Positions 11,595-60,600 of a stretch of DNA of 64,000 nucleotides are shown piece by piece (the first letter of the stretch is position 1; every line of letters begins with the position of its first letter). The stretch is from Dendrobates tinctorius (taxonomy: Eukaryota). The stretch covers positions 3,844,001 to 3,908,000 of the forward strand of contig NW_027361921.1 in assembly GCF_039654945.1 (NCBI RefSeq). Direction: 5' to 3'. The notes under the pieces were generated by a model. It was not told the origin of the DNA and searched no databases. It saw only the letters and a list, made by a program, of their open reading frames with translations. Position numbers and translations under genes: made by a program.

Positions 11595-14500
11595 TTACAT
11601 TCAATGTTGTGGCGTCCAAATAAATGTAATTCTGGCGTTATGACTTTTTTTCACTATGCTGTTTAACGATCAGGTTAATCCTTTTTTTGTTGATAGATAA
11701 GGCGATACCAAATATGTTTATTTTTATTTCTTTATGGTTTTATTTTGAAGGGGGCAAAAGGGGGGGTGATTTAAAATTTTAATTTTTTTTATTTTTTAAT
11801 ATTTTTAAAACTTTTTTTTTACTTTTGGCATGCTTCAATGGTCTCCATGGGAGACTAGAAGCTTCCATAACCCGATCGGCTCTGCTCCATAAAGGTGATG
11901 ATCAGATCACCTGTATGTATCAGAATACCTCACTTGCTATGTGTGCCGACCACCGGGCGGTGCTCACAGCAAGGCAGCAGTGACAACCATAGTGGTCTCC
12001 AGGATGCCAAACCATCGGTGACCCGCGATCACGTGACGGGGGTCACCAATCGGCAGATTTCTGGCACGATGGCCATAAGCATGCGTTAAATGCCGCTGTC
12101 AGAGTTTACCAGTGGCATTTAACAAGTTAATAGCCATATGTGAATCGCAATTTCACCGGCGGCTGTTTCGGGCACATGTCAGCTGTTCAAAATAGCTGAC
12201 ATATGCTGGAAAAGACGTGGGCTCACCGCTGGAGCCCACATCAAAAGGGGAGTCACGGCATGCACAGTACATGTATGTCGCATGTTGTGAAAGCGGTTAA
12301 AAAAAGATATAAACTGTAAAAAGAAAATATTTAATGCATTTTGTTATGTGCCTTAAAAAAACACATGATGTCATGTAGCAATACTTATCATGAAATGTTA
12401 GGAATTTGTTTAAATAAGATTCTTAGATTCAAGATGTAATAATTGATTTAATGCAAATCATTTCAGGTTAAATTTTAAGAAATTTGCTGGACTAAATGTG
12501 TGATACAATTGGTATGATTTGACAAAAATATACAACACCACATTACACAAAGTAGATGATGGCATCGGCGATAGAATGCCAACCCCAAGCATGCCTATAT
12601 GTGCATCCCAATAATGCCTTGCAGCTATCACAAGGTTATTGTACTTCTAATAAGGAGGGAATATAGTAGGCTTTATAAAAGCCAGGCCAGAGAAAGCATC
12701 AGCCATTTTAGGGAGAATCTGGTTAGCCAATAAAGGTATCACTCCTTGAATACTTTTCTCAATTTTTTTGTGGACATAAGTATTTACATCTATTTTTCTG
12801 GCTAACATGGTACCACAATATTATTTTGTATTGTACATCATAGGGAGAATCTGGAAATGCAAGGTGACATTAGAGATCACAGTCAAGCAACAGTTAATGA
12901 CGAGAGTAATTCATAAAGCATTGGACTAAACTACAGCATGTAACACGAAGAAAAAACAACAGCATGACAAACGTGCAAAAATACTCTGCTGTAAAAATAT
13001 AACAGTAGACAGCCAGTGCTAGTAAAAAATGATAACAAAAACAGGGTATTTAGTTGATACATTTTTTACAAAAAATGTATACGAAGCCACTGCACCAACG
13101 TCACGGTATACCCATCTCGGAGCAGTCCTGTCTAATGTATTTAAAACCTGATCATGTGAGCAATACCTAAATGAGCAGGATTCAAAAAGGCGCTTCCTTA
13201 TGTAGGCATGCTGTGTAAGAGACGGCTCTTATTAGTTCCTTGCTCAGCAAGGTTTGGGAGATTCCCGCCCCTCTCTTGTGTGACATGCTTTTTGTTTGCT
13301 TTTTTTATCATTTTCATTACATGCTAAAACTGACCTGCCATTAGGATTTTCAAAGTCATTACGACTTTGCAGATACCAAACATGTATAGGTTAGTAAGTG
13401 CTAAAAAAAAATCCAAAGTTTGTGAAAAAAAAAAAAATGTCGCCATATTCCAAGAACCGTAGCATCTCAATTTTTCTGGATCTGGGGCTGGGTAAGGGCT
13501 TATTTTTTGAGTGCCAAGCTGATGTTTTTATTAACCCCTTCATGACCCAGCCTATTTTGACCTTAATGACCTGGCCATTTTTTGCAATTCTGACCAGTGT
13601 CCCTTTATGAGGTAATAAGTCAGGAACTCTTCAACGCATCCTAGCGATTCTGAGACTGTTTTTTCATGACATATTGGGCTTCAAGTTAGTGGTAAATTTA
13701 GGTAAAAATGTTTTGCATTTATTTATGAAAAAAATGGAAATTTGGAGAAAAATTTGGAAATTTTGCAATTTTCAAATTTTTAATTTTTCTTCTGTTAAAC
13801 CAGAGAGCTATGTGACACAAAATAGTTAATAAATAACATTTACCACATGTCTACTTTACATCAGCACAATTTTGGAAACAAAATTTTTTTTGTTAGGAAG
13901 TTATAAGGGTTAAAAATTGACCAGCGATTTCTCATTTTTACAACAAAATTTACCAAACCATTTTTTTAGGGACCATCTCACTTCAGAAGTCGCTTTGAGG
14001 GGTCTATATGGCAGAAAAAAACAAAAGTGACACCATTCTAAAAACTGCACCCCTCAAGCTACTCAAAACTACATTCAAGAAGTTTATTAAGCCTTCAAGT
14101 GCTTCACGGGGACTAAAGCAACATGTAAGGAAAAAATGGACATTTTAATTTTTCCAACCAAAATTTTCCTTTAGCATCAATTTTTTCATTTTTACATGGA
14201 TAACAAGATAAAATGGCTCGTAAAATTTGCTGGGCAATTTCTCCTGAGTACACCGATACCTCATATGTGGTCATAAACCACTGTTTGGGCACATGGCAAA
14301 GCTCAGAAGGGAAGGAGTGCCATTTGACTTTTTGAATGGAAAATATGCTGGAATATTTAGCGGACACCATGTCGTGTTTGGAGAGGCCCTGTGTTCCTAA
14401 ACATTAGAGCTCCCCCTCAAGTGACCCCATTTTGGAAACTAGACCCTCCAAGAAACTTATCTAGATGCATAGTGAGTACTTTGAACCCCCAGGTGCTTCA

Positions 14501-15229
14501 CAAATTGATCCGTAAAAAAAAAGTCCTTTTTTCAACAAAAATTTTCTTTTAGTCTCAGTTTTTTCATTTTCACATGGGCAACAGGGTAATATGGATCTTA
14601 AATTTGTTGGAAAATTTCTCCTGAGTACACTGATACCTCATATGTGGTCATAAACCACTGTTTTGGCGCACGGCATGGCTCAGAATGGAAGGAGCACCAT
14701 TTGACTTTTTGAATGGAAAATATGCTGGAATATTAAGTGGTTGCCATGTCACGTTTGGAGAGTCCCTGTGTGCCTAAACATTGGAGCTCCCCCACAAGTG
14801 ACCCCATTTTGGAAACTAGACCCTCCAAGGAACTTATCTAGATGCATAGTGAGTACTTTAAACCCCCAGGTACTTCACAAATTGATCCGAAAAAAAAAGT
14901 ACTTTTTTTCACAAAAATTATCTTTTAGCCTCACTTTTTTCATTTTCACATGGGCAACAGGATAAAATGGATCCTAAAATTTGTTGGGCAATTTCTCCTG
15001 AGTACACGATACCTCATATGTGGTCATAAACCACTGTTTGGGCGCATGGCAGGGCCCGGAAGGAAAGGAGCGCCATTTGACTTTTTGAATAGAAAATTAG
15101 CTCCAATCGTTAGTGGACACCATGTCGCATTTGGAGAGTCCCTGTGTGCCTAAACATTGGAGCTCCCCCACAAGTGACCCCATTTTGGAAACTAGACCCC
15201 CGAAGGAACTTATCTAGATGTGTGGTGAG

Positions 15230-15539
15230 TAGAGTTGAGCGACTTTGGTCGGATCGGGTTTCATGAAACAAAATTTGTTTCAGATGAAACTGGTCCGACT
15301 TGTGCAAAAAAAGACGGAGTTTCGTCTGAAACCCGACCCCAATGCAAGTCAATGGGAAATAAAGTTGACATTGAGCAGATGACATTCATCCACTCAATGC
15401 CGACTTTTATTCCCCATTGACTTGCATTGGGGTCAGGTTTCGGACGAAACTCTGACTTCTTTTGCCCTAGCGGGACCAGTTTCATCTGAAACAAATTTTG
15501 ATTCATGAAACCCGATCCGACCAAAGTCGCTCAACTCTA
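15230..15539. mobile_element. hAT-type MITE, almost fully palindromic (310 bp)
   Basis: TIR TAGAGTTGAGCGACTTTGGTCGG / CCGACCAAAGTCGCTCAACTCTA; 8-bp TSD GTGGTGAG (15222-15229) / ATGGTGAG (15540-15547). Confidence 0.88.
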
Positions 15540-16634
15540 ATGGTGAGCACTTTGAACCCCCAAGTGCTTCACAGAAGATTATAACGCAGAGCAGAGAAAA
15601 TAAAAAATCTTTTTTCCTCAAAAATGATATTTTAGCCCACTATTTTTTATTTTCACTAGGGTAGCAGGTGAAATTGGACCCCAAAAGTTGTTGTCCAGTT
15701 TGTCCTGAGTACGCTGGTACCTCATATGTGGGGGGAAACCAATGTTGGAATGGAAGGAGCAACATTTGACTTTGATTGGAAAATTAGCTCCAATCATTAG
15801 CGGACACCATGTCGTGTTTGGATAGCCCCTGTGAGCCTAAACTTTGGAGCTCCCCTACAAATTACCCCATTTTGGAAACTAGACCCCCTAAGGAACTTAT
15901 TTAGATGCATAGTGAACACTTTGGACCTTCAGGTGCTTCACAGAAGTTTATAACGCAGAGCCATGAAAATAAAAATAATTTTTTTCCTCAAAAAATGATT
16001 TTTTAGCCCGCTAATTTTTATTTTCACAATGGTAACAGGAGAATTTGGACCACTAAAGTTGTTGTCCATGTTCTCCTGAGTACGCTGGTACCCCATATGT
16101 GAGGGTAAACCACTGTTTGGGCACACGTCGGGGCTCAGAAGGGGAGTAGTGATGTTTTGGAATGCTGAATTGATGGAATGGTCTGCGGGTGTTATGTTAC
16201 GTTTGCAGAGCCCCTGATGTGCCTAAACAGTGGAAACCCCCCACAAGTGACCCCATTTTGGAAACTAGACCGCCGAAGCAACTTATCTAGATGTGTGGTG
16301 AGCACTTTGAACACCCAAGTGCTTCACAGAAGTTTATAATGCAGAGCCATGAAAATAAAAAATCATTTTTTTCCACAAAAATAATTATTTTAGCCCCTAA
16401 TTTTTTTATTTTCCCAAGGGTAACAGGAGAAATTAGACCCCAAAAGTTGCACAATTTTTACTGAGTACCCTGATACCACATATGTGGGGGTAAACCACTG
16501 TTTTGGCACACATCGGGGCTCGGAAGGGAGGGAGCACTGTTTGACTTTTTGAACGCAAAAATGGCTGGAATAAATGGTGGCGCCATGTCATGTTTGGAGA
16601 CCCCCTGATGTGCCTAAACAGTGGAAACCCCTCA

Positions 16635-17015
16635 ATTCTAACTCCAACCCTAACCCCAACACACCCCTAACCCTAATCCCAACCCTAATCATAACCCTAA
16701 CCACAACCCTAACCCCAACACACCCCTAAGCCTAATCCCAACTCTAACCCTAACCCCAAGCATAACCCTAATCCTACCCCAACCCACCCCTTACCCTAAT
16801 CTTAACCATAATTCCAACTCTAACCCTAATTCCAACCCTAATCCCAACCCTAGTTCCAACCCTAACCCTAATTCTAACCCTAATCCTAATTCTAACCCTA
16901 ACCCTATTTTTAACCCTAACCCTAATTCTAACCCTAACCCTATTTCTAACCCTAACCCTAATTCCAACTCTAATCATAACCCTAACCCTTGCCCTAGCCT
17001 TAGCCCTAACCCTAA
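16635..17015 (-). repeat. Degenerate (CCCTAA)n array in family C copy 2
   Basis: CCCTAA, TTCTAA and TTCCAA hexamers. Confidence 0.88.
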
Positions 17016-18646
17016 CGGAAAAATAAAAATATTTTCTTTATTTTATTAGTTGTCCCTACCTATGGGGGTGATAAACGGGGGGTTTATTTACTTTTTTTTA
17101 TTTTGATCACTGTGAGTTTATCACAGTGATCAAAATAAATAAATGAATCTGCAGCTGGCAGAATCCGGCGGGCACACTGCACATGCGCCTGCCATTTTCC
17201 AATATGGCGGCACCCATGATGCGGGACACCGGGACAGCCAGAGGGACAGGAGGTATCGGGGAGGGTGAGGGGGAGAATCAGAAGGCTGGGTGGAGTGGAG
17301 GGAAGGGGGAGGGGAGCTGATGATGACTGCGACGACCGATCGCTGCCGTCAATCGGTGGCCGGGTCCGATCGGTGCTGTTAGTGAGTGGGGAGGGTCTCT
17401 TCGGTGTCTGCAGCCATGGCCGATGCTATTGCAGCATCGGCCATGGCTTGATTGTAATATTTCACCAAATTTCTTTGGTGAAATATTACAATCGCACTAC
17501 GCATGTGCCTGCCATTTTCCAAGATGGCGGTGCCCATGAGCCGGGACATCGGGAGCCAGAGCGGGACTCGGAGGCACCGTGGAAGGTGGGGGGGTGATCG
17601 GACTGCGGGGGGGAGCGGAGGGAAGGGGAGTGGAAGCAGATTGTGATGGCAGTAGCCAATCGCTGCCGTCAGTCCGTGGCAGGGGCCGATCGCCCCCACC
17701 AGCCGGTGTGGGGGGGTCAGATTAGGGTCTGCAGCCATGTCCGATGCTACTGCAGCATTGGCCATGGCTGGATTGTAATATTTCATCAAATTTCATTGAT
17801 GAAATATTACTATCGCTCTGTTTGACTGTTGAAAGTGAAACAGCCAATCAGAGCAATCGTAGCCACGTGGGGGCTAAGCCACCCCCCCTGGGGTGAAGTA
17901 CAAAGCACCCTGTATCTGCGGGTCGGGTGACCCTTCAGTGACCCTGGTCACCCGACCCGCAGGGGGGCTTTGAAGTCATGATGCAGCATATGCGTCATGG
18001 GTCGGATTGGCACCGACTTTCATGACGCATATGCTGTGTCACAGGTCGGGAAGGGGTTAATACTATTTTGGGGTAAATACAATATTTTGATTACCTTTTA
18101 TTGCAATGTTGCGATGATAAAAAAAGTAATTCTCTGTTTTTTATTTATTTTCTCATTACACAACTTACTGATATTTCTTTTTATATTTTGACAGATCAGG
18201 CGTTTCTGAACACAACAAAGCTGTGATCTTCTGATCGCTTGTGATAAACATAGCAAGGCTTCAACCCTGCTATGTGTAGCAGAAATGCTCATCTGCTATG
18301 AATGCCGGCCACTAAGTAGAACTCATAGCAGACTGGCAATGACAAGCACAGGGTTCTTCTGCAGACCCCCGTTTGTCATGCCAACCTATTGGCACCCCGA
18401 GATCAAATGATAGGTGCGCTGATGGGCATAGTTAGTGATGTGTTTCCGGAGCGAGCATGTTAAATGCCGCTGCCAGAGTTTGACAGCAGCATTTAACATG
18501 TTAACAGCTGTAGGTGGATCATAATTCCAGAAAATCAATTGTCATGGGCTGGAAAAGATGCAAGAGCAGCACCGGAGCCCGGATCAAAGAGGGATGCACA
18601 ACATATGACGTACTTATAGTGTATGAGTTTCTCTATCCAGCAATAG

Positions 18647-26190: not shown

Positions 26191-28868
26191 TATTTGACTA
26201 AGAACACCCTTCAGACTGTGTAAAAAGAGAATTGTCAGCACCACCTGATTTGCAATGTTAAAATTCAGTGTTGCATATGTTCGAGCATCTGTATTGTAAA
26301 GTGATATAATCAGCTATCAGGCATACTGGGGCTTGGGTTATGGGAAGTTACCATTGGCAGCTAATGAAGGAGATGTGTCATCTACTGAGACCCTGAGGTT
26401 AATTAATTTTTCAGTAGGGACAATTGTGGCATCAATATTGCGATGCTCCTTATATTTATATTGGAAAAATCATGCACCAGGATGCAATAGGAGACAGAGG
26501 AAGAACATCAATTTGTATATGTTCATCACCACCGCCTTAGGGTTTTGGGGACACTCACGGATAATGTTAAATACAGCAGAATGTGAAGAAGAGGGAGGTC
26601 AAGAGGTGAAAGAGGAGCAGTAGGTGATTGTGGAGGATGACATTGAGTCATCTTAGGCATGGGGAAGGGAGGAGGCTAATAGACAGAGTGAAATTGATGT
26701 TTCGACAAAGAGGAGGCTATGTTTAACAATCATTGCAGTGGGGTGCGGAAATTAAACCAGTCAGGCCCTCAGTCAAGCTAGCTAGCATAGCAAGTGCATC
26801 TATGCTTTTACACCCATGCATTTTTTTTTAGCTTATGAAAGAAAGTTAATTGGCACATTAGCAGGGTAAACTGTGTTCACTGCTCGGCAAAGTGTTCACT
26901 GAGAGATACCTGCCAACCACACAACTAACCAAGAGACCTCTCTCAGCTCTCCGAAGAGACAATTCTTCCCCACTAGGTGCTAGGGCCAGTAGAGTAGCTG
27001 ACTCAGCATGGCTCATCTAGAGAAACTGGTACCCTTAACACCTTCATGACCAAGCCTATTTTGACCTTAATGACCAGGCCATTTTTTGCAATTCTGACCA
27101 ATGTCCCTTTATGAGGTAATAACTCTGGAATGCTTCAACGGATCCTAGAGATTCTGAGATTGTTTTTTGTGACATATTGGGCTTCATGTTAGTGGTAAAT
27201 TTGAGTCGATAATTTTTGCGTTTGTGAAAAAATCAGAAATTTGTCGAAAATTTTGAAAATTTCGCAATTTTCCAAATTTGAATTTTTATTCTGTTAAACC
27301 AGAGAGTTATGTGACACAAAATAGTTACTAAATAACATTTCCCACATGTCTACTTTACACTAGCACAATTTTGGAAATAAATTTTTTTGTTGTTATAAGG
27401 GTTAAAAGTTGACCAGTGATTTCTCGTTTTTACAACAAAATTTACAAAACCTTTTTTTTTAGGGACCACCTCACATTTGAAGTCACTTTGAGGGGTCTAT
27501 ATGGCAGAAAATACCCAAAAGTGACACCATTCTAAAATCTGCACCCCTTAAGCTACTCAAATCTACATTCAAGAAGATTATTAACCCTTCAGGTGCTTCA
27601 CAGGAACTAAAACAACGTGGAAGGAAAAAATGGACATTTTCATTTTTCCAACAAAAATGTTCTTTTAGCATCAATTTTTTCATTTTCACATGGGCAACAG
27701 GATAAAATGGATCCTAAAATTTGTTGGGCAATTTCTCCTGAGAACACCGATACCTCGTATGTGGTCATAAACCACTGTTTGGGTGCACGGCAGGGCTCAG
27801 AAGGGAAGGATCTCCATTTGGCTTTCTGAATGGAAAATATGCTGCAATATTTAGCTGTTGCCATGTCGCGTTTGGAGAGCCTCTGTGTGCCTAAACATTG
27901 GAGATCCCCCACAAGAGACGCCATTTTGGAAACTAGACCTCCACAAGGAACTTATCTAGATGCATAGTGATCACTTTGAACCCCCAGGTGCTTCACAAAT
28001 TGATCCATAAAACAAAGTACTTTTTTTCACAAAAATTTTCTTTTAGCCTCAATTTTTTCATTTTCACATGGACAACAGGATAAAACGGATCCTAAAATTT
28101 GTTGGGCAATTTCTCCTGAGTACACCGATATCTCATATGTGGTCATAAACCACTGTTTGTGTTTGAGCGCACGGCAGGGTCCGAAAGGGAAGGAGCGCCA
28201 TTTGACTTTTTGAATGGAAAATTAGCTTCAATCGTTAGCGGACACCATGTCGTGTTTGGAGAGCCCCTGTGTGCCTAAACTTTGGGCTCCCCCACAAATG
28301 ACCCCATTTTGGAAACTAGACCCCCTAAGGAACTTATGTAGATGCATAGTGAGCACTTTGAACCCCCAGATGCTTCATAGAAGCTTATCACGCAGAGCAG
28401 TGAAAATAAAAAAATCATTTTTTTTCCTCAAAAATGATTTTTTAGCACGCTATTTTTTATTTTCACATGGCTAACAGGAGAAATTGGACCACAAAAGTTG
28501 TTGTCCAGTTTGTCCTGAGTACGCTGGTACCCCATATGTGGGGGGAACCACTGTTTGGCGCACGGCAGGGCTCAGAAGGGAAGGAGTGCCATTTGACTTT
28601 TTGAAATGAAAATTAGCTCCAATCGTTAGTGGACACCATGTCGTGTTTGGAGAGCCCCTGTGTGCCTAAACTTTGGTCTCTCCCCACAAATGACCCCATT
28701 TTGGAAACTATACCCCCTAAGGAACTTATGTAGATGCATAGTAAGCACTTTGAACACTCAGATGCTTCACAGAAGTTTATAACGCAGAGCCGTGAAAATA
28801 AAAAATATTTTTTTTCCTCAAAAAATTATTTTTTAGTCCGCAATATTTTATTTTCAAAAGGATAACAT

Positions 28869-28906
28869 CTGATGAGGGGCAATACCCCGAAACAGCTATC
28901 TGTGGA
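28869..28906 (+). ncRNA. Type-I hammerhead ribozyme copy 1 (5' strand of stem I lost at the junction; GUC changed to AUC)
   Basis: CTGATGA-GGGG-CAATA-CCCC-GAAA-CAGCTA-TC-TGTGGA. Confidence 0.8.
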
Positions 28907-28953
28907 TGGATACCTTGTTTTGGCATAGGTGGTTTCCTTAATTGGAGACTGCC

Positions 28954-29770
28954 TGTTAGGAGTCAGATTTCTGCCTCTCCTTTGCTGAAATCTAGATCCT
29001 CACATTTTGCAATCTCCTGCTCTTCATCTGCTGTAGAAGGGACTGTAGAGGAGATTGCCTTGCGGCAACTCTCTCCAGAGGCTAAGTCCTCTACCCCTGC
29101 ATCTGAGCATGTTCATGGGACGAACTCTCATTGGAGTTCGGGAGACAGGTGTTCAGATCCTGTGTCGGATCCCATTGGCTCCTCTTGGAGACCTGGTGAT
29201 TTCCGGAAGGTCCTGTTCGCTATAAAAAGCGCGCATGGCTATTCCGCCATGCTCTAGTATAGCCATACTGCTGCTGTATGTTTGTTGATGGATGCATGGA
29301 CTGGTGAATGACTCATTGGAAACCCCTCCCCTCTGATACTACGTCTGTGAGAGTGCCTGAGTTATTGCCAGTTAGCAGTGTCTTTACAGCGGCTCTGTCT
29401 TTGCCGCGCTGCAATTGCAGCTCTTCGTGCGTCTGCAGTTGCGAAGCTCTACACACGATCCTTGTTGGTAGGTCTAGATGGAGTAAGTACCGCCATCTAG
29501 TGCTACTCCTGTGACCAGATACTGCGGGTGCAGCGCTGTAGTTCTGTGTCCTAAACAGACTCAGCGTTTTTTGTGTTTTATTTCTGTGACTCTGTGAGTT
29601 CAACAGAGTCTGAGCAGTGCACACTGGGTGCCATTAACCCCTGTGCACATTATCGCCAGATTGCTCTGCCGTCACCTAGCAGCAGTTATTACATCTTCTG
29701 CACGGTGGACCCCGAGTGGCGAAGGTACTTTATTTATATTTTTATTTAGTGCCTTCTGCCACTCCTAACA
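28954..29770. mobile_element. Solo LTR (817 bp) inserted in the first ribozyme unit
   Basis: TGTTAGGAGT ... ACTCCTAACA terminal inverted repeats; 5-bp TSD CTGCC (28949-28953) / CTGCT (29771-29775); TATAAAAAG at 29221. Confidence 0.85.
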
Positions 29771-30037
29771 CTGCTCTTCCCATGGTTGTTCCTTCCCAGG
29801 GAAAGACCTGGCTAGTCATTGCTTGCGTTGAGAAACATGTGATGGTGTCTCCGCGGCTTGTGTTTTGCATATGTTTACATATTTCCCATAAGGGATGGGG
29901 TCATTGCTCTAGAATCACTGCTTTGAGAAACATGTGATGGTGTCTCCGCAGTGTTGGATGTTGATCTCCATGAGTTCATTCATCCTCATTTTTCACAGTC
30001 TTCTACTAGGCATTGCTCCTACTGGCCAGTTTCCTAC

Positions 30038-30081
30038 TCCACACTGATGAGGAGCAATACCCCGAAACAGCTGTCTGTGGA
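30038..30081 (+). ncRNA. Type-I hammerhead ribozyme copy 2 (one stem II mismatch); predicted cut after C30075
   Basis: TCCACA-CTGATGA-GGAG-CAATA-CCCC-GAAA-CAGCTG-TC-TGTGGA. Confidence 0.88.
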
Positions 30082-30215
30082 TGGATACCATGTTTTGGCA
30101 TAGGTGGTTTCCTTCATTGGAGACTGCCCTTCCCGTGGTTGTTCCTTCCCGTGGAAAGACCTGGCTAGTCATTGCTTGCGTTGAGAAACATGTGATGGTG
30201 TCTCCGCGGCTTGTG

Positions 30216-30333
30216 TTTTGCATATGCTTACATATTTCCCATAAGGGATGGGGGCATTGCTCTAGAATCACTGCGTTGAGAAACATGTGATGGTGTCTCC
30301 GCAGTGTTGGATGTTGATCTCCATGAGTTCATT
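30216..30333 (+). promoter_or_regulatory. Candidate snRNA-type promoter elements of the repeat unit (octamer-like, SPH/Staf-like, PSE-like), present in each unit
   Basis: TTTTGCAT 30216-30223 (one mismatch to ATTTGCAT); TTTCCCATAAG 30235-30245 (partial SPH); TCTCCATGAGTTC 30318-30330 (resembles amphibian TCTCC-type PSEs). Similarity judged by eye. Confidence 0.45.
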
Positions 30334-30390
30334 CATCCTCATTTTTCACAGTCTTCTACTAGGCATTGCTCCTACTGGCCAGTTTCCTAC

Positions 30391-30434
30391 TCCACACTGA
30401 TGAGGGGCAATACCCCGAAACAGCTGTCTGTGGA
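30391..30434 (+). ncRNA. Type-I hammerhead ribozyme copy 3 (intact); predicted cut after C30428
   Basis: Stem I TCCACA (30391-30396) / TGTGGA (30429-30434); core CTGATGA 30397-30403; stem II GGGG/CCCC with loop CAATA; GAAA 30417-30420; minimal stem III with palindrome CAGCTG; GUC triplet. Confidence 0.93.
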
Positions 30435-31294
30435 TGGATACCATGTTTTGGCATAGGTGGTTTCCTTCATTGGAGACTGCCCTTCCCATGGTTGTTCCTT
30501 CCCGTGGAAAGACCTGGCTAGTCATTGCTTGCGTTGAGAAACATGTGATGGTGTCTCCGCGGCTTGTGTTTTGCATATGTTTACATATTTCCCATAAGGG
30601 ATGGGGGCATTGCTCTAGAATCGCTGCGCTGAGAAACATGTGATGGTGTCTCCGCAGTGTTGGATGTTGATCTCCATGAGTTCATTCATCCTCATTTTTA
30701 ACAGGAGAGATTGGACCCCAAAAGTTGTTGTACAGTTTGTCCTGAGTATGCTGGCACCCCATATGTGTGGGGGAACCACTGTTTGGGCACACGTCGGGGC
30801 TCGGAAGGGAAGTAGTGGCATTTTGAAGTGCTGACTTTGATGGAATGGTCTGCGGGCATCATATTACATTTGCAAAGCCCCTGTACCTAAACTGTGGAAA
30901 CCCCCCACAAGTGACCCCATTTTGGAAACTTGATCCCCCAAGAAACTTATCTAGATGTGTGGTGAGCACCTTGAACCCCCAAGTGCTTCACAGAAGTTTA
31001 TAACGCAGAGCCATGAAAATAAAAAATAGTTTTTTCCTCAAAAAAAAGATTTTTAGCCCGCAATTTTTTTTCACAAGGGTAATAGGAGAAACTAGACCCC
31101 TATAGTTGTTGTGAAATTTTTCCTGAGTATGCAGATACCCCATATGTTGGGGTAAACCACTGTTTTGGCACACGTCAGGGCTTGGAAGGGAGAGAGCACC
31201 ATTTGACTTTTTGAACGCAAAATTGGCTGGAATCAATGGTGGCACCATGCCACGTTTGGAGACCCCCTAATGTGCCTAAACAGTGGAAACCCCT

Positions 31295-31632
31295 CAATTC
31301 TAACTCCAACCCTAACCCCAACACACCCCTATCCACAACCCTAACCCCAACACATCCCTAACCCTAATTCCAATCCTAACCATAACCCTAACCCATCGCA
31401 CCCCTATCCCTAATCCCAACCTTAACCCTAACCACAAGCCTAACCCTAATCCCAACCCTAACTCCAACACACCACTAACCCTAATCTTAACCCTAATTCC
31501 AACCATAACCCTAATTCCAACCATTACCCTAACCCTAATTCCATCCTAACCATAATTCCATCCTTAACCATAACCCTAATTCCAACCCTAACCCTATTTC
31601 CAACCCTAACCCTAATTCTAACCCTAGCCCTA
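31295..31632 (-). repeat. Degenerate (CCCTAA)n array in family C copy 3
   Basis: CCCTAA and variants. Confidence 0.88.
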
Positions 31633-32639
31633 AAGGAAAAATAAAAATATTTTCTTAATTTTATTATTTGTGCCTACCTATGGGGGAAATAAAGGGGGGG
31701 TTATTTACTTTTTTATTTTATTTTGATCACTGTGAGAGTTTATCACAGTGATCAAAATGAATGAATGGAATCTGCAGCCGCAGATTCCGGCGGGTGCACT
31801 GCGCATGCGCCTGCCATTTCCGTAGATGGCCGCGCCCATGATCTGGGACCGCAGGACATCGGGAGCGACAGCGGCACTCGGAAGATACCGGGGGATGGGA
31901 GGGGGGGTGATCGGAAGCTGGAGGGAGCGGAGGGAAGGCGGGGGAGCAGATAATGACAGCGGCGACAGATCGCCGCTGTCATTCAGTGGCGGGGAGCAGA
32001 TCGACCCCGTTAGCTGGTGAGGGGGTCGAATCGGTGTTTTCAGCCATGTCCGATACTATTTCAGCATCGAACATGGCTCATTGATGAAATATTACTATCG
32101 CTCTGATTGGCTGTTTCATTTTAACAGCCAATCAGAGCGATTGCAGTCACGTGGGGGAGAAGCCACCCCCCTGTGATGAAGCACAAAGCCCTCTGTATCT
32201 GCGGGTCGGATGACCTTTCATTGACCCCGGTCACCCGACCCACAGGGGGGCTTTAATGTCATGACACAGCATATGCGTCATTGGTTGGATTGGCACCGAC
32301 TTTCATGACGCATATGCTGTGTCACTGGTCGGGAAGGGGTTAATTGTATTGGAGTGCGCAGCATGCTGATACTGTTAAACTCTGCGGAAAGGCCAGGAGC
32401 ATGTCTACCTACATGACTGCTCCCTGTTCCATAAGCTGCAGGTTGCTTTAAGTCTGCATCTTGCAGAATGGCAGGTTCTTGCCGAAGTAATGTGATGGCA
32501 TCATCACCCAAGTCATTGTCCCAGTGCGATGACATCACCATGTTGGTCTGCCGTGACCTGCCAATGTCTGCCACTGGACTTACCGGTGTTAGGTGAATAT
32601 ATGATGTTTATTTTAATATTAGGTGATGGCCAATAAGTG

Positions 32640-33670: not shown

Positions 33671-34212
33671 GGGCCCTGTCACACATAGCGACTCACCAGC
33701 GATGCCGACAATGATATCAACTTGTCAGGATCGCAGGTGAGTCACTACATAATTGCTGGTGAGCTGTCAAACAGACAGCTTCACCAGCGATCAGCACCAG
33801 TGACGCCGAGCACCCGGCGTCGCTGTGTACATTAGTTACCAGCGAGCTGATGCAGGGGGCTGGTAACTAAGGTACACATCAGGTTTCTAAGCAGCGCGCG
33901 TCACTTAGAAACCCGATGTGTAACTTGGTTACCAGCTCCCTGCATCAGCGCGCTGGTAACTAAGGTACACATCTGATTTCTAAGCACCCGCACAGTGCTT
34001 AGAAACCCTGCGTCTACCCTAGTAACCAGCGCAATGATCGCTGGTCTCCCGCCTGTCACACGCAGCGATGCGTGCTGGCCAGCGGGAGACCAACGATCAA
34101 AAAAATGTCCTGGCTATTCCAGGACGATCAGCGATAACTGGCAGGGGGGCCGGTCGCTGGTCAGTGTCACACACCGCGATCTCGCTGGTGAGATCACTGT
34201 TGCATCACAAAA
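33671..34212. mobile_element. Harbinger-type MITE, right end truncated
   Basis: TAA|GGGCCCTGTCACAC left end; internal inverted repeats (GTTACCAGC / GCTGGTAAC); no matching right TIR. Confidence 0.55.
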
Positions 34213-34346: not shown

Positions 34347-35953
34347 CAGTGGGGAAAAAAAGTATTTAGTCAGTCAGCAATAGTGCAAGTTCCACCACTT
34401 AAAAAGATGAGAGGTGTCTGTAATTTACATCATAGGTAGACCTCAACTATGGGAGACAAACTGAGAAAAAAAAATCCAGAAAATCACATTGTCTGTTTTT
34501 TTTTCATTTTATTTGCATATTATGGTGGAAAATAAGTATTTGGTCAGAAACAAGCAATCAAGATTTCTGGCTCTCACAGACCTGTAACTTCTTCTTTAAG
34601 AGTCTCCTCTTTCCTCCACTCATTACCTGTAGTAATGGCACCTGTTTAAACTTGTTATCGGTATAAAAAGACACCTGTGCACACCCTCAAACAGTCTGAC
34701 TCCAAACTCCACTATGGTGAAGACCAAAGAGCTGTCAAAGGACACCAGAAACAAAATTGTAGCCCTGCACCAGGCTGGGAAGACTGAATCTGCAATAGCC
34801 AACCAGCTTGGAGTGAAGAAATCAACTGTGGGAGCAATAATTAGAAAATGGAAGACATACAAGACCACTGATAATCTCCCTCGATCTGGTGCTCCACGCA
34901 AAATCCCACCCCGTGGGGTCAGAATGATCACAAGAACGGTGAGCAAAAATCCCAGAACCACGTGGGGGGACCTAGTGAATGAACTGCAGAGAGCTGGGAC
35001 CAATGTAACAAGGCCTACCATAAGTAACACACTACGCCACCATGGACTCAGATCCTGCAGTGCCAGACGTGTCCCACTGCTTAAGCCTGTACATGTCCGG
35101 GCTCGTCTGAAGTTTGCTAGAGAGCATTTGGATGATCCAGAGGAGTTTTGGGAGAATGTCCTATGGTCTGATGAAACCAAACTGGAACTGTTTGGTAGAA
35201 ACACAACTTGTCGTGTTTGGAGGAAAAAGAATACTGAGTTGTATCCATCAAACACCATACCTACTGTAAAGCATGGTGGTGGAAACATCATGCTTTGGGG
35301 CTGTTTCTCTGCAAAGGGGCCAGGACGACTGATCCGGGTACGTGAAAGAATGAATGGGGCCATGTATCGTGAGATTTTGAGTGCAAACCTCCTTCCATCA
35401 GCAAGGGCATTGAAGATGAAACGTGGCTGGGTCTTTCAACATGACAATGATCCAAAGCACACCACCAGGGCAACGAAGGAGTGGCTTCGTAAGAAGCATT
35501 TCAAGGTCCTGGAGTGGCCTAGCCAGTCTCCAGATCTCAACCCTATAGAAAACCTTTGGAGGGAGTTGAAAGTCCGTGTTGCCAAGTGAAAAGCCAAAAA
35601 CATCACTGCTCTAGAGGAGATCTGCATGGAGGAATGGGCCAACATACCAACAACAGTGTGTGGCAACCTTGTGAAGACTTACAGAAAACGTTTGACCTCT
35701 GTCATTGCCAACAAAGGATATGTCACAAAGTATTGAGATGAAATTTTGTTTCTGACCAAATACTTATTTTCCACCATAATATGCAAATAAAATGAAAAAA
35801 AAAACAGACAATGTGATTTTCTGGATTTTTTTTTCTCAGTTTGTCTCCCATAGTTGAGGTCTACCTATGATGTAAATTACAGACGCCTCTCATCTTTTTA
35901 AGTGGTGGAACTTGCACTATTGCTGACTGACTAAATACTTTTTTTCCCCACTG
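34347..35953 (+). mobile_element. Full-length Tc1 element (1607 bp, ~200-bp TIRs)
   Basis: TA|CAGTGGGGAAAAAAAGTATTTAGTCAG ... CTAAATACTTTTTTTCCCCACTG|TA. Confidence 0.95.
34714..35736 (+). pseudogene. Tc1 DD34E-type transposase, 340 codons with one in-frame TGA at 35587-35589
   Basis: Paired-like HTH N-terminus, [25 protein letters not shown]; the frame continues past the stop to ...GYVTKY* at 35736. Confidence 0.93.
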
Positions 35954-47659: not shown

Positions 47660-47824
<165 letters not shown>

Positions 47825-49582
47825 CTACTTTTGTTTCATCTGACCAAAGAACATTCTTCCAAAACGTTTTATGCTTTTTCAGGTAAGTTTTGGCAAACTC
47901 CAGCTTGGCTTTTTTATGTCTCGGGGTAAGAAGTGGGGTCTTCCTGGGTCTCCTACCATACAGTCCCTTTTCATTCAGACACCGACGGATAGTACGGGTT
48001 GACACTGTTGTACCCTCGGACTGCAGGGCAGCTTGAACTTGTTTGGATGTTAGTTGAGGTTCTTTATCCAACATCCACACAATCTTGCGCTTAAATCTCT
48101 TGTCAATTTTTCTTTTCCGTCCACATCTAGGGAGGTTAGCCACAGTGCCATGGGCTTTAAACTTCTTGATGACACTCCACACGGTAGACACAGGAACATT
48201 CAAGTCTTTGGAGATGGACTTGTAGCCTTGAGATTGCTCATGCTTCCTCACAATTTGGTTTCTCAAGTCCTCAGACAGTTCTTTGGTCTTCTTTCTTTTC
48301 TCCATGCTCAATGTTGTACACACAAGGACACAGGACAGAGGTCGAGTCAACTTTAATCCATGTCAACTGGCTGCAAGTGTGATTTAGTTATTGCCAACAC
48401 CTGTTAGGTGCCACAGGTAAGTTACAGGTGCTGTTAATTACACAAATTAGAGAAGCATCACATGATTTTTCGAACAGTGCCAATACTTTTGTCCACCCTC
48501 TTTTTTATGTTTGGTGGGGAATTATATCCAATTTGGCTTTAGGACAATTCTTTTTGTGTTTTTTCATTTAGGACAAATTAAATGAAGATAATAATACCAA
48601 AGAATTTGTGTTTGCAATCATTTTCAGGAAGAAACTGAGTATTATCTGACAGAATTGCAGGGGTGTCAATACTTTTGGCCACAACTGTATATATAAACGA
48701 GCAAGGTGATAGTCCCAGGTATAATAGCCCATAGATTGGAAGGTGATAACCTATAAATAAGGTTAGGATAAGGCAGCTAGCAAAGCATTAAAGTGGAAAC
48801 ACCTATAGGGCCTGTAAGATGTCAGCGTATATCACTCATGGAAAGCAGTTAGGTTAAGCCAGAAGGTCAGGAGTGTCCATAATATGAGGAGAGCAGTCTC
48901 AGGACCAGGGGGCAGTGGGAGAGACCCCACGTGTATCGCTGCAAAGGCAGCTTTGTCAGGGGAATCCCTGCGGACAATTGGCACTGGCTGTGCTCTCCTC
49001 TCCTGCGGACAAATCAGACATCCAGAGGAAGAGAGAGCTGTGGCTGCCCTTTCACTTCCTCTGGATGTCAATTATGTCCACAGGAGAGGAGAATAAAGTT
49101 AGAGATGATCGGCCAGAGGGATTATATGACATAACAATGTCACGCGATCCTAGGGAGAGCCAATGCCAACAACACTGGTTTTGTGCCTGCACCGATGGTG
49201 ACTATAAGGCAGAAGTCACACTACCTTGGAAAACGGATGATTGCTATGCAAAAAATAAAAATCGCATAGCACTCGGACCAATGTTAAGCTATGGGGCAGC
49301 TCACATCATTCGTTATCTTCTCGCCCGTTTTATATGTTCTGGTAAAATCGCAGCATGCTGCGATTTGCACCGTATCTCGGCCGAGACTTGCCAATGTAAG
49401 TCTATGGGTGCGAGAAAAAAACAGATTACACACGGACCATGCGTGTGACTTGTGAGAAATATGCAAGCATTGGTCAGGTGACAGGAAATTGCCTCTGCCA
49501 ATATTCAGGAAATTTTGAAATGCTAATTAGCCTAGGAAGTTTTAGAACAAGCCACCATCACGCCTCCACGGAGTACAGCAAG

Positions 49583-52624
<3,042 letters not shown>

Positions 52625-57688: not shown

Positions 57689-60600
57689 TGTTGTGAGTTC
57701 ATTTTCCCCTCCGTCACTGAGGCCTGGTGAACTCCCTATTCTAGTGAAGGAAGGTAGTGAGCCTGATTATCAGGCACCTGGGACTAATGAAGACGATTGG
57801 CTGAGTGGGGTCACTGACTGGATTTAAGGCAGCCTACGCCCTTTCTGCCCTGCGGGTGATTTCTCTGTGGACTCTGGGACACCAGTCTGATTCCTGCTCT
57901 CCTAAAGCTAAGTTTTCTGTTTTTCCTTTTTGCATCTAAGATTTGTTTTTGTTTTTCTTGCTTTTTGGATTCTGCCACTCCCTGCTGGAGTGTGCAGTGG
58001 TCCTTGAGCTCTGTCTTCTGAAAGTACCTGAGTGCTGATTTAGTTTTGAAGCTTAGTTGCTTCAGGGCCATTTTTATATCAGCTTGTTGGCTTTTGTCTC
58101 TGATAGGGTTTTGGCAGATTGCAGACAGCAGCCTTCCTATCCTTTCCTATCTAGGTAGTTTTTGGGCCCCGTCTTTGCTCAGCCTGTCTTTCTGTCTGTG
58201 TAAGTGTTTTCATCTTGCTTCACCGTCATTATATGTGGGGGGCTACCTATTGCTTTGGGGTCTGCTCTGGGGCAGTTAGATTTCCCCTTTCCTTCTTTAG
58301 GCCTATGTATCTCTCCGGCTGTGATCGAGGGGTCTAGGTCATCGTAGGAACCCCCCACGGCTACTGCTAGTTGTGTTGATAGGTTCAGGGGTCTGCAATC
58401 TGATAGTTGCCAACTTCTCTGGTTTTCAGGACTTAGCTAGCATTTCTGTTTTTGCCTCCTACGGTTACTCAATCATAACAGAATCACCCGCCCTACCGCA
58501 GATCCTGGGGTACTCAATAGCAGGAAAGAATTGTGTTTAAAAAAAAAAAAAAGGTGTGTGTATATTCTTTCCTCTAAATCTCTGAGGCAGTAGGGGGAAT
58601 TTTTTTTTTTCTCTCAATGGAGATAAAGCAAGTGTATGATCGTGTGGAGCAGCTCGCTGCGGAAGTGCGAGGAATTTCCGCCTATCTTGCTCGTTCACAT
58701 GCTGTTGAACCAAAGATCCCCACACCTGATGTATTTTTTGGGGATCGATCTAAATTTTTGAGTTTCAAAAATAATTGTAAATTATTTTTTGCTTTGAAGC
58801 CTAACTCGTCAGGGAGCCCCGCGCAGCAGGTTAAAATTGTCATCTCTTTGCTGCGCGGCGATCCCCAGGATTGGGCGTTTTCTTTGAATCCAGATGACCC
58901 TATTCTGACTAATGTGAACGCATTTTTTCAAGCCTTGGGGTTGCTGTACGACGAACCTAATGCTATTGATCAGGCTGAAAAGACCCTGTTAGCATTGAAC
59001 CAGGGTCAAGAATCTGCAGAGTTGTACTGTCAAAAGTTCCGAAAGTGGGCGGTCCTTACTACCTGGAATGATAGTGCCTTGGCTGCTCTCTTTCGGAAGG
59101 GTTTGTCAGAAGCCGTAAAAGATACTATGGTGGGATTTCCTGTTCCCTCTGGTCTGGACGATTCTATGTCTTTAGCCATTCAGGTTGATCGGCGTTTACG
59201 TGAACGCAGGATTACACGAGAGGTGTTGCCACCGGTTGAACAGACGTCTGAACCTATGCAATGTGATGGTTTTGTCTAAGGCGCAACGTCAGGAATTCAG
59301 AAGGCGTAATAAGCTGTGTTTTTTCTGTGGAGATGCCTCACATGTTATTTCTGTTTGTCCTAAACGTGAGAAACGCTTTGCACACACGTTTTCTGTTGGT
59401 GGGGTTCAGCCTAAGTTTCTTTTGGCGATTACTCTGATCTGTTCCCTGTCCACGTTTTCCGCCAAGGCTTTTGTGGATTCGGGAGCAGCGCTAAACCTAA
59501 TGGACTTGGATTTTGCTAAACATTGTGGATTTCCGTTGACACCTCTGCAGACGCCTATCCCTTTGAGGGGGATTGATGCTACCCCTCTGGCTAAAAATAA
59601 ACCTCAGTTTTGGACCCAGTTGGTCATGCGGGTCGCCCCAGACCACCAAGAAAATTGCAGATTTTTGGTGTTGCATGGTCTGCATGATGCCGTTGTTCTG
59701 GGGGTTCCCTGGTTGCAGATTCATAATCCAGTTTTGGATTGGAAGTCTGTGTCTGTGGTGAGTTGGGGTTGCCGGTGTACCTTTAGTGAGGCTCCGGTTT
59801 TTTCCACCTCTCCTCAGTCGCATGAGGTTCCTGACTATTTAGCGGACTACTATGATGTATTTAGTGAGAATGAGTCTGCGTCCTTGCCTCCTCATAGGAG
59901 TTATGACTGTGCAATTGAACTAAACCCGGGGTGTAAATTTCCTAAGGGTCAGCTCTTCAATTTATCTGTGCCCGAGCACGAGGCTATGCGGTCCTATATT
60001 AAGGAGGCGTTGGAGAAGGGTCATATTAGACCATCCTCTTCACCCTTAGGTGCCGGGTTTTTTTTTGTGGCCAAGAATGATGGTTCTTTAAGGTCTTGTA
60101 TTGATTATCGTGCCCTCAATAAAATTACTATTAAATATCAGTATCCGTTACCCCTGATTTCGGATCTATTCTCTAGAGTCAGAGGTGCTTGCTGGTTTAC
60201 CAAGCTTGACCTCAGGGGGCGTATAATCTTATCCGCATTAAGCAGGGGGATGAATGGAAGATGGCGTTTAATACTCCGGAGGGACATTTTGAGTACCTGG
60301 TGATGCCTTTTGGGCTCACTAATGCCCCTTCTGTCTTCCAGTGCTTCATGAACGATATTTTCCGAGACTTTGTCGATAAATTTTTGATTATCTATCTGGA
60401 TGATGATATTTTGATCTTCTCCAAGGATTGGGATTCTCATGTGGAACATATTCGGACTGTGTTCCGGATCTTGAGAGAGAATTCTCTGTATGTCAAAGGA
60501 TCACAATGCCTTTTTGGAGTACAGAGAATTTCTTTTTTGGGATTTATTTTGTCTCCGTCTACTATTGAAATGGACCCAGCCAAGGTACAGGCCATTTATG

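What the first reader, a model, noticed from the sequence alone, without database searches (positions are those of the whole stretch)
28868..30698. Tandem 353-bp hammerhead-ribozyme repeat (retrozyme / satellite-2-like) nested inside a transposon
Seen: three hammerhead cores spaced exactly 353 nt apart once the LTR insertion is removed. The intact copy reads TCCACA-CTGATGA-GGGG-CAATA-CCCC-GAAA-CAGCTG-TC-TGTGGA, giving stem I, the CUGAUGA/GAAA core, stem II, a minimal stem III with a palindromic loop and a GUC site. The unit has no credible ORF. Known: newt satellite 2, schistosome Sm-alpha and metazoan non-LTR retrozymes are tandem repeats of similar size with type-I hammerheads, and they give monomeric and circular RNAs. 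Inference: read-through transcripts self-cleave to a 353-nt monomer (30076-30428) that can circularise and be retro-copied by Penelope-type machinery. I cannot tell whether this frog family is already described.
Basis: partly seen in the sequence, partly recalled or inferred. Interest (0 to 1): 0.92.

Follow-up and report, generated by a model that had tools for sequence, protein, structure and literature searches.

The report
Frog hammerhead-ribozyme repeat (non-LTR retrozyme)
This is a roughly 1-kb insertion made of almost three copies of a 353-base non-coding repeat, each carrying a self-cutting "hammerhead" RNA motif; it is an aged copy of a kind of mobile element already described in salamanders and frogs.

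Summary
The stretch 28868-30698 is 2.86 head-to-tail copies of a 353-bp unit. It is split by an 817-bp solo-LTR-like insert with a 5-bp target duplication, and removing those 822 bp restores an exact 353-bp period.

Three hammerhead cores start at 28869, 30044 and 30397. Only the hammerhead at 30391-30434 is fully intact:
- It has every core nucleotide, a 6-bp stem I, a 4-bp stem II and a GUC site at C30428.
- Its stem III is minimal and lies inside the 8-nt palindrome ACAGCUGU.
- The copy at 30044 has a stem II mismatch.
- The copy at 28869 lacks one strand of stem I and has a broken palindrome.

Rfam aligns the type-I model over its full length, but at 20 bits, below the gathering score of 34. 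Across 101 hammerheads of the same architecture from metagenome contigs, stems I and II covary strongly.

The whole array is one discrete insertion. It is flanked by TAACA on both sides and sits inside another repeat.

This matches amphibian non-LTR retrozymes, the newt satellite 2 and axolotl Rtz type, whose hammerheads cut as dimers. Such elements were recently catalogued in Xenopus and other amphibians. Cleavage, circles and Penelope-driven copying are inferred, not shown. Other windows of this scan noted similar retrozymes in the same genome.

Verdict: a new member of a known kind, of low interest.

The parts
28863..28867 (.). Left copy of the putative 5-bp target-site duplication TAACA of the whole array
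   Evidence: Uninterrupted host units read ..TAACAGGAG.. once. In the blastn of a host unit, the left flank ends at host position 317 and the right flank starts at position 313, a 5-bp overlap.
28868..28953 (+). Truncated first unit. It starts with one non-matching T, then CUGAUGA. Its hammerhead is defective: there is no 5' strand of stem I, and G->A at 28898 breaks stem III and the palindrome.
28954..29770 (.). 817-bp solo-LTR-like insertion into the first full unit. It has TG..CA ends and a 10-bp terminal inverted repeat TGTTAGGAGT/ACTCCTAACA. There is no other copy in the window.
29771..29775 (.). Second copy of the insert's 5-bp target duplication (CTGCT; the first copy, CTGCC, is at 28949-28953)
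   Evidence: Removing 28954-29775 restores the 353-bp period exactly.
29776..30075 (+). Rest of the interrupted unit. It ends at predicted cleavage site C30075. Its hammerhead (30038-30081) has an A.C mismatch in stem II (G->A at 30053).
30076..30428 (+). The one complete uninterrupted 353-nt unit, running from cleavage site to cleavage site. It is 48% GC and non-coding, and its predicted fold is more stable than shuffled sequence.
   Evidence: Linear MFE is -124 kcal/mol, z = -3.07, with 0 of 100 shuffles as stable.
30391..30434 (+). Intact type-I hammerhead:
- stem I: UCCACA/UGUGGA
- core: CUGAUGA
- stem II: GGGG-CAAUA-CCCC
- core: GAAA
- stem III: AC-AGCU-GU, inside the palindrome ACAGCUGU
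- cleavage after C30428
   Evidence: Rfam Hammerhead_1 aligns over model positions 1-45 of 45 at 20.2 bits, E = 0.0052 on 81 nt.
30429..30698 (+). Last, 3'-truncated unit (unit positions 1-270), ending ..CCUCAUUUU
30699..30703 (.). Right copy of the putative 5-bp target-site duplication TAACA. It overlaps a microhomology with the unit (TTTTTCACAG), so the boundary is uncertain by a few bases.
27035..32350 (+). Host composite repeat into which the array inserted. It has a left arm, ~385-391-bp tandem units, a degenerate CCCTAA-like run and a right arm. Other copies lie at 13531-18067 (+), 10940-8009 (-) and 8013-6410 (-).

Best explanation
The stretch is one old insertion of a non-LTR retrozyme. 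This is a non-coding, non-autonomous retroelement made of tandem 353-nt units, each encoding a type-I hammerhead of the amphibian 'satellite 2' architecture.

Shown here:
- the repeat structure and the complete hammerhead core and helices;
- the palindromic stem III;
- the discrete insertion with flanking TAACA;
- the later solo-LTR-like insertion;
- the high copy number of the family in public runs labelled as two organisms.

Inferred from the family's published behaviour:
1. A multimeric + strand transcript folds so that two neighbouring hammerheads pair through the ACAGCUGU palindrome, forming an 8-bp shared stem III (a double hammerhead).
2. Each hammerhead cuts after its GUC, releasing 353-nt monomers with 5'-OH and 2',3'-cyclic phosphate ends.
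3. A tRNA ligase of the RtcB type closes the monomers into highly self-paired circles.
4. The reverse transcriptase of a Penelope-like element copies the RNA into a nicked target. Copying starts internally near unit position 270 and runs around the template almost three times, which would give a 2.86-unit array whose ends do not coincide with the ribozyme cut site.

This particular copy has since decayed. The units differ by 1.5-3%, one hammerhead is lost, one is weakened, and an LTR has landed in it. It is probably not a productive source today.
For: Repeat structure:
- 353-bp period, 97% matches.
- The exact period is restored when the 822-bp insert plus TSD is removed.

Hammerhead:
- All core positions are present, with a 6-bp stem I, a 4-bp stem II and a GUC site.
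- The Rfam type-I model aligns end to end at 20.2 bits; its own consensus has the same 8-nt palindromic stem III.
- The pattern is absent from 100 shuffles of the window.
- Two copies cofold into the double hammerhead at -36.3 kcal/mol. That compares with 2 x -15.4 for the non-native monomer MFE and 2 x -10.2 for the native monomer fold.
- Across 102 sequences with the same stem III, 86.4% of cells pair, against 27-33% when partners are slid. There are 178 double-sided changes, all 10 variable pairs covary, and 0 of 500 shuffles reach the observed values.

Insertion:
- The host consensus carries one TAACAGGAG, and TAACA lies on both sides of the array.
- The array ends fall at unit positions 321 and 270, not at the cut site.

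Family:
- 46-78 variant contigs in runs of organism A and 1705 in organism B lie on the unit at 90-100% identity.
- One contig leaves the unit at the same position 270 into a different flank.

Other features:
- 48% GC, non-coding, fold z = -3.07.

Literature:
- Axolotl Rtz_331 and Rtz_353 have hammerheads with a single-base-pair stem III capped by a palindromic tetraloop. Cleavage is weak in monomers and efficient in dimers. Linear and circular RNAs are seen, and RtcB circularises them (PMC7229834).
- Non-LTR retrozymes occur in all 7 amphibians sampled and are related to Penelope pLTRs in Xenopus (bioRxiv 10.64898/2026.07.22.740005).
Against: - There is no direct evidence of RNA, cleavage or circles. 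All runs laid were contigs, and the two that hold the whole unit are only guessed to be RNA.
- Rfam scores are below gathering: no hit on the whole window, and 20.2 against 34 bits on the short stretch.
- The TSD is short and overlaps a microhomology with the unit. An alternative reading has no TSD and an end at unit position 275.
- No Penelope-like element is in the window, and none of six large ORFs next to same-type hammerheads in metagenome contigs had RT or GIY-YIG domains.
- Only 1 of 9 Xenopus retrozyme dimers cleaved in vitro (bioRxiv 10.64898/2026.07.22.740005).
- In an anole Penelope element, hammerhead cleavage was not needed for insertion in vitro (PMC11167929).
Confidence: 0.82

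Rival explanations
1. This is a dead relic only. The element once belonged to a hammerhead repeat family, but this locus no longer yields cleaved or circular RNA and has no present activity.
For: - One hammerhead is truncated and its palindrome is broken.
- One has a stem II mismatch.
- An 817-bp insert splits the array.
- Units differ by 1.5-3%.
- Most tested Xenopus dimers did not cleave (bioRxiv 10.64898/2026.07.22.740005).
Against: The two rightmost hammerheads keep the full core and the intact palindrome, so a double hammerhead between them is still possible. This reading concerns the activity of this copy, not its kind, and is compatible with the best explanation.
Confidence: 0.55
2. This is a fragment of an autonomous Penelope-like element. 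On this reading the tandem units are pseudo-LTRs left after loss or 5' truncation of the ORF, not an independent non-autonomous family.
For: - Penelope-like elements are organised as partial tandems with hammerheads in their pLTRs (PMC4209133, PMC11167929).
- In the RNA run of a third organism, only the hammerhead and its flanks (30352-30452 plus 30100-30171) are shared and the rest of the unit is not. That is what a shared pLTR module would look like.
Against: - Almost three units follow each other with no trace of an RT or GIY-YIG frame.
- The whole insert is 1009 bp and bounded by host sequence.
- The hammerhead is the canonical type with stems I and II, not the minimal variant reported for Penelope elements (PMC7229834).
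Confidence: 0.08
3. This is ordinary satellite DNA that spread by unequal crossing-over or segmental duplication. On this reading the hammerhead is a passenger and there was no retrotransposition.
For: The surrounding region is rich in tandem and segmental repeats, with at least four copies of the host repeat in the window. The TSD is only 5 bp and overlaps a microhomology.
Against: - The array sits as a clean insertion inside a host unit whose uninterrupted copies show the empty site.
- The other three host copies in the window lack it.
- An independent junction in other contigs leaves the unit at the same position.
- The 5' junction carries one untemplated base.
Confidence: 0.05

Closest known systems
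Axolotl non-LTR retrozymes Rtz_331 / Rtz_353 with HHR_Amex1-type hammerheads (Cervera and de la Pena 2020, PMC7229834)
   Same: - Tandem non-coding units of 330-350 bp.
- A type-I hammerhead with loops in stem I and stem II.
- A one-base-pair stem III (beyond the A15.1-U16.1 pair) capped by a palindromic tetraloop, implying cleavage as a dimer.
- GC below 50%.
- A self-paired predicted RNA.
   Different: - Sequence homology outside the ribozyme was not tested, because no axolotl sequence was on hand.
- The source here is a frog-like genome, not a salamander.
- Expression and circles were shown for the axolotl but not here.
Newt satellite 2 (Epstein and Gall 1987; dimeric cleavage; snRNA-type promoter, Coats et al. 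1994, as cited in PMC7229834 and PMC2220036)
   Same: A repeat of about 330 bp with a type-I hammerhead whose weak stem III requires a double-hammerhead arrangement.
   Different: - The newt repeat forms long satellite blocks; here there is a 2.86-unit discrete insertion.
- The internal snRNA-type promoter is not supported here. The only octamer-like site per unit is a 7/8 match (30216-30223), and such matches are no commoner than chance in the window (85 seen, 97 expected).
Xenopus non-LTR retrozyme families including REP4_XT (Li, Clavereau and Pollet 2026, bioRxiv 10.64898/2026.07.22.740005)
   Same: - Anuran tandem hammerhead repeats with an average amphibian consensus length of 316 bp.
- Most families reach at most seven units.
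- They are dispersed as monomers, dimers and multimers.
- They are related to Penelope pLTRs.
Schistosome Sm-alpha and invertebrate retrozymes (coral, mussel)
   Same: Type-I hammerhead in short tandem non-coding repeats, with the same core and the same covarying stems I and II.
   Different: Invertebrate hammerheads have a more stable stem III and cleave efficiently as single motifs (PMC7229834). Sm-alpha has a pol III promoter (PMC2220036).

Membership tests
Hammerhead ribozyme, type I (Rfam RF00163) | Conserved core C3-U4-G5-A6-N7-G8-A9, G12-A13-A14, A15.1-U16.1 pair, and H17 at the cleavage site | tested here: met
   30397-30403 reads CUGAUGA, 30417-30419 reads GAA, A30420 pairs with U30427, and C30428 is H17. 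The core is aligned column for column by Rfam.
Hammerhead ribozyme, type I (Rfam RF00163) | Three helices around the core, with stem I open and stems II and III closed | tested here: met
   - Stem I: 30391-30396 with 30429-34 (6 bp).
- Stem II: 30404-07 with 30413-16 (4 bp, loop CAAUA).
- Stem III: AC/GU with loop AGCU.
Hammerhead ribozyme, type I (Rfam RF00163) | Score at or above Rfam's gathering threshold | tested here: not met
   There is no hit at gathering on the whole window. The score is 20.2 bits against 34 when only 81 nt are searched. The shortfall fits the short stems and the minimal stem III.
Hammerhead ribozyme, type I (Rfam RF00163) | Helices supported by compensatory changes among relatives | tested here: met
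   This holds at class level. In 102 sequences sharing GAAACAGCUGUC, all 10 pairs of stems I and II show double-sided changes. 86.4% of cells pair, against about 30% in slid controls. The window copy forms all 12 pairs.
Hammerhead ribozyme, type I (Rfam RF00163) | Self-cleavage after H17 | not testable with these tools
   This needs in vitro transcription, or raw RNA reads showing ends at C30075 and C30428.
Non-LTR retrozyme (metazoan) | Tandem repeats of about 150-450 bp, each unit with a type-I hammerhead | tested here: met
   353-bp period, with three hammerhead cores in register.
Non-LTR retrozyme (metazoan) | Non-coding, with no LTRs of its own | tested here: met
   The only long frame is a 97-aa antisense ORF with no Pfam family above threshold. 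The LTR-like piece is a later foreign insertion with its own TSD. PBS and PPT motifs were not searched for.
Non-LTR retrozyme (metazoan) | GC below 50% and a stable, self-paired RNA | tested here: met
   GC is 48.2%. The circular MFE is -117.8 kcal/mol with 64% of bases paired. The linear fold has z = -3.07.
Non-LTR retrozyme (metazoan) | Discrete insertions with target-site duplications longer than 4 bp | tested here: inconclusive
   TAACA lies on both sides and the empty site is seen in sister host units. However, the duplication is only 5 bp and overlaps a microhomology with the unit.
Non-LTR retrozyme (metazoan) | Many dispersed genomic copies | tested here: met
   Dozens to 1705 variant contigs lie on the unit in runs of two organism labels. 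At least one junction leads into a different flank. Other windows of this scan note similar elements (not checked here).
Non-LTR retrozyme (metazoan) | Unit-length linear and circular RNAs in tissues | not testable with these tools
   Only contigs were available. They show neither ends, strand nor circles.
Amphibian satellite-2-type hammerhead (HHR_Amex1-like) | Very weak stem III capped by a palindromic tetraloop, favouring a dimeric hammerhead | tested here: met
   ACAGCUGU is its own reverse complement. The two-copy cofold gives an 8-bp shared stem III at -36.3 kcal/mol.
Amphibian satellite-2-type hammerhead (HHR_Amex1-like) | Sequence homology of the unit to newt or axolotl repeats | not tested
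A text search for the ribozyme sequence in papers found nothing.
Penelope-like element derivative | Similarity of the unit to a pLTR of a Penelope-like element in the same genome | not testable with these tools
   No Penelope-like element is in the window (one search shows only Ty3/Gypsy and Tc1-type ORFs). The rest of the genome could not be searched.

The most novel reading that the evidence does not exclude
Independent insertions of this family may share one 3' boundary, at unit position about 270-279. This array ends at the position equivalent to 30345. A contig from other runs leaves the unit at 30345 into a different flank, and further junction classes lie at 30353/30354. Meanwhile the 5' ends vary and neither end matches the ribozyme cut site.

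If a genome-wide census confirmed this, it would be a genomic footprint of site-specific internal initiation of reverse transcription on a circular or multimeric retrozyme RNA. The 2.86-unit length would record rolling-circle copying. That would turn the so far hypothetical mobilisation mechanism of non-LTR retrozymes by Penelope-type enzymes into something directly testable.
Probability: 0.2. Interest if true: 0.5.

Novelty: new member of a known kind. Interest (0 to 1): 0.2.

Why it matters
It adds one well-delimited example to a known class: a multimeric retrozyme insertion with a visible empty site, a probable target duplication and a later nested LTR. Such a locus is useful for dating and for studying how these elements integrate. 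It does not change what is known. Tandem hammerhead repeats have been known in amphibians since 1987. They were reinterpreted as non-LTR retrozymes in 2020 and catalogued in frogs in 2026. The only point with some reach is the possible common 3' boundary of insertions, which bears on how the RNA is reverse-transcribed.

Tried and rejected
- **Rfam at gathering threshold on the whole window:** nothing. On 2.1 kb with E up to 10, only a permuted 16-bit type-III match appeared. The type-I model appeared only when 81 nt were searched.
- **First core pattern:** it used a wrong spacer length and found nothing. It was corrected.
- **Internal snRNA-type promoter:** this was proposed in another note of the scan and is known for newt satellite 2. 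The per-unit octamer-like site TTTTGCAT is a 7/8 match, and such matches are not enriched in the window (85 seen, 97 expected). PSE and SPH elements could not be scored objectively. The idea is left unsupported rather than refuted.
- **Antisense 97-aa ORF per unit:** there is no family (TusA at 16 bits, below its cut-off), and every difference between the two copies changes the residue. Rejected as a gene.
- **Penelope link through metagenome contigs:** six large ORFs near hammerheads of the same type had no RT or GIY-YIG domain. One is an animal class-C GPCR fragment and one a GNAT acetyltransferase. Only 1 of 120 such contigs has the hammerhead in a tandem array. These contigs therefore support the ribozyme fold, not the retrozyme context. 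blastn found no similarity to the 353-bp unit beyond the 42-nt ribozyme.
- **Text search of papers for the ribozyme sequence:** no paper.
- **The search of earlier findings by sequence and by several words:** blank.
- **Read laying:** all four runs were contigs, so expression, ends and circles remain untested. The 'goes back 336' joint in X17 is only the continuity of the permuted reference, not evidence of a circle.
- **Species identity:** it stayed coded and was not pursued.

Full report
**What is in the sequence**

Tandem Repeats Finder reports a 353-bp period over 29770-30704 (2.6 copies, 97% matches, no indels). The repeat finder adds an 85-nt piece of the same unit at 28869-28953.

Between these lies an 817-bp foreign segment, 28954-29770:
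- It starts TGTTAGGAGT and ends ACTCCTAACA.
- It is flanked by CTGCC/CTGCT.
- Deleting it together with one copy of the 5-bp duplication (822 bp) leaves exactly 353 bp between the first two ribozyme cores.

Without it the element is 1009 bp, or 2.86 units. The core pattern CTGATGAG-N11-CGAAAC occurs only at 28869, 30044 and 30397 in the 64-kb window. The longer pattern that includes the stem III palindrome occurs twice, against none in 100 shuffles.

**The ribozyme**

The copy at 30391-30434 has every conserved hammerhead position:
- CUGAUGA, GAA, the A15.1-U16.1 pair and C17;
- a 6-bp stem I (UCCACA/UGUGGA), which can extend by a further 3 bp after an internal loop;
- a 4-bp stem II with loop CAAUA;
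- a stem III of only A-U and C-G closed by AGCU.

The eight bases ACAGCUGU are their own reverse complement. When two copies are folded together, the minimum-energy structure is the double hammerhead with an 8-bp shared stem III. Its energy is -36.3 kcal/mol, against -15.4 for the non-native fold of one copy and -10.2 for the native single hammerhead.

Rfam gives no hit at gathering thresholds on the window. When only 81 nt are searched, the type-I model aligns over all 45 positions at 20.2 bits (gathering score 34, E = 0.0052 for that short search). Its consensus shows the same palindromic stem III.

For an independent test I scanned metagenome contigs for CTGATGA-N10-16-GAAACAGCTGTC. The scan found at least 120 contigs, apparently animal host DNA; one encodes a class-C GPCR fragment. 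In an alignment of 101 distinct sequences plus the window copy:
- stems I and II pair in 86.4% of cells, against 27-33% when partners are slid;
- there are 178 double-sided changes;
- all ten variable pairs covary;
- 0 of 500 shuffles reach the observed values.

The architecture is therefore a real, widespread hammerhead class, and the window copy conforms to it at all 12 pairs.

**State of the three copies**

Only the copy at 30397 is intact. The copy at 30044 has G->A at 30053, an A.C mismatch in stem II; its predicted local fold drops from -20.3 to -13.4 kcal/mol. The leftmost copy starts at the CUGAUGA box, so it lacks the 5' strand of stem I. It also has G->A at 28898, which breaks both stem III and the palindrome.

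Units differ pairwise by 1.5-3.0%.

**Insertion context**

The array lies inside a unit of a ~385-391-bp tandem repeat. Uninterrupted sister units of that repeat read ..TAACAGGAG.. once. At the array, TAACA stands at 28863-28867 and again at 30699-30703. In blastn the two host flanks overlap by host positions 313-317.

This is most simply a 5-bp target-site duplication. The right boundary overlaps a microhomology with the unit (TTTTTCACAG), so a reading without a duplication and with an end five bases further on cannot be excluded.

The element starts with one base that matches neither host nor unit (T28868). It begins at unit position 321 and ends at position 270, so neither end is the ribozyme cut site. 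The template was therefore not a simple ribozyme-cut linear monomer. It was a multimer or a circle copied for almost three turns.

The host is a composite repeat, 27035-32350. It consists of a left arm, tandem units, a degenerate CCCTAA-like run and a right arm, and it has three more copies in the window. I could not show that it is a transposon.

**Family evidence from public runs**

The unit's words are held by runs from eight studies. When one permuted unit (30100-30452) was laid on four runs:
- 46-78 variant contigs lay on it in two runs of the window's organism label;
- 1705 lay on it in a run of a second organism, at 90-100% identity;
- in a bona fide RNA-Seq run of a third organism, only the ribozyme and its flanks were held (30352-30452 and 30100-30171).

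All of these were contigs. They show a high-copy family and a conserved ribozyme module, but no RNA ends, strand or circles.

Variants that reach 10% lie in loop 2 (30408, 30411) and upstream of stem I, not in the core.

One contig leaves the unit at 30345 into an unrelated flank. That position corresponds exactly to where this array ends (30698). Other junction classes lie at 30353 and 30354. This hints at a preferred 3' boundary, but it rests on very few listed junctions.

**Comparison with what is known**

Cervera and de la Pena (PMC7229834) define metazoan non-LTR retrozymes as follows:
- tandem 150-450-bp non-coding repeats with type-I hammerheads;
- GC below 50%;
- target duplications longer than 4 bp when present;
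[quoted passage not shown] It cleaves poorly alone (6%) and efficiently as a dimer. Circularisation is done mainly by RtcB ligase. The window's element matches each sequence-level feature (48% GC, fold z = -3.07).

Li, Clavereau and Pollet (bioRxiv 10.64898/2026.07.22.740005) report:
- such elements in all seven amphibians sampled, with 57 families in Xenopus;
- an average amphibian consensus length of 316 bp, and mostly seven units or fewer per array;
- a phylogenetic relationship to Penelope pLTRs;
- cleavage in vitro for only one of nine tested dimers.

Frangieh et al. (PMC11167929) show that a Penelope enzyme starts reverse transcription internally on its RNA, and that hammerhead cleavage is dispensable for insertion in vitro.

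The mobilisation steps in my explanation are inferred from these papers. Nothing in this window tests them, and no Penelope-like element is present here. The window holds only Ty3/Gypsy-type and Tc1-type ORFs.

**Other ideas tested**

- An internal snRNA-type promoter, as in newt satellite 2 (cited in PMC2220036), is not supported by the one objective test I could run. The octamer-like site is a 7/8 match, and such matches are no commoner than chance.
- The 97-aa antisense ORF in each unit has no family, and every difference between its two copies changes the residue.

**Verdict**

Other windows of this scan carry first-reader notes of similar hammerhead retrozymes of 317-351 nt in the same genome. 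I did not check those notes. This is a new member of a known kind, of low interest, with one modest lead: the shared 3' boundary.

Noticed in passing
window 27035-32350; also 13531-18067 (+), 10940-8009 (-), 8013-6410 (-): A composite repeat is present at least four times in the window. Each copy has a ~600-bp left arm, an array of ~385-391-bp tandem units, a degenerate telomere-like CCCTAA-type run (31300-31633 in this copy) and a GC-rich right arm. Its nature (transposon with internal tandem repeats, or segmental repeat) is not established.
   Followed up: partly
window 28954-29770: An 817-bp solo-LTR-like insert with TG..CA ends, a 10-bp terminal inverted repeat, a TATAAAAA box at about 29222 and a 5-bp target duplication with one mismatch. 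There is no second copy in the window and its parent element is unknown.
   Followed up: partly
window 30177-30207 and 30272-30302 (and the same places in the other units): Each 353-bp unit contains a perfect 31-nt internal direct duplication (TTGAGAAACATGTGATGGTGTCTCCGC..). Both copies form the same hairpin in the predicted fold. Some contigs in public runs appear to join across the two copies.
   Followed up: no
window 30345 / 30698 (unit position 270); runs X15, X16, X5: A contig from other runs leaves the unit at exactly the unit position where this array ends, and continues into a different flank. Further junction classes lie 8-9 nt downstream. This may mark a common 3' boundary of insertions.
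   Followed up: partly
loci L001-L120 (metagenome contigs): At least 120 metagenome contigs carry hammerheads with the same GAAACAGCUGUC stem III and covarying stems I and II. Only one sits in a tandem array (period 341). L034 encodes a 7tm_3 GPCR fragment, so these are animal host sequences inside metagenomes.
   Followed up: partly
window 59185-62678 (+): Ty3/Gypsy chromovirus-type pol with protease, RT, RNase H, integrase, SH3 and chromodomain, in two adjoining open frames.
   Followed up: no
window 34714-35589 (+), 47676-48350 (-), 50292-51125 (-): Three Tc1/Sleeping-Beauty-like transposase frames with HTH_Tnp_Tc3_2, HTH_SB and, in the first, DDE_3 domains.
   Followed up: no
window 33824-33971: A near-perfect hairpin with 68-nt arms, 91% complementary and 12 nt apart, lying within a short direct repeat. 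It is possibly a MITE-like element.
   Followed up: no
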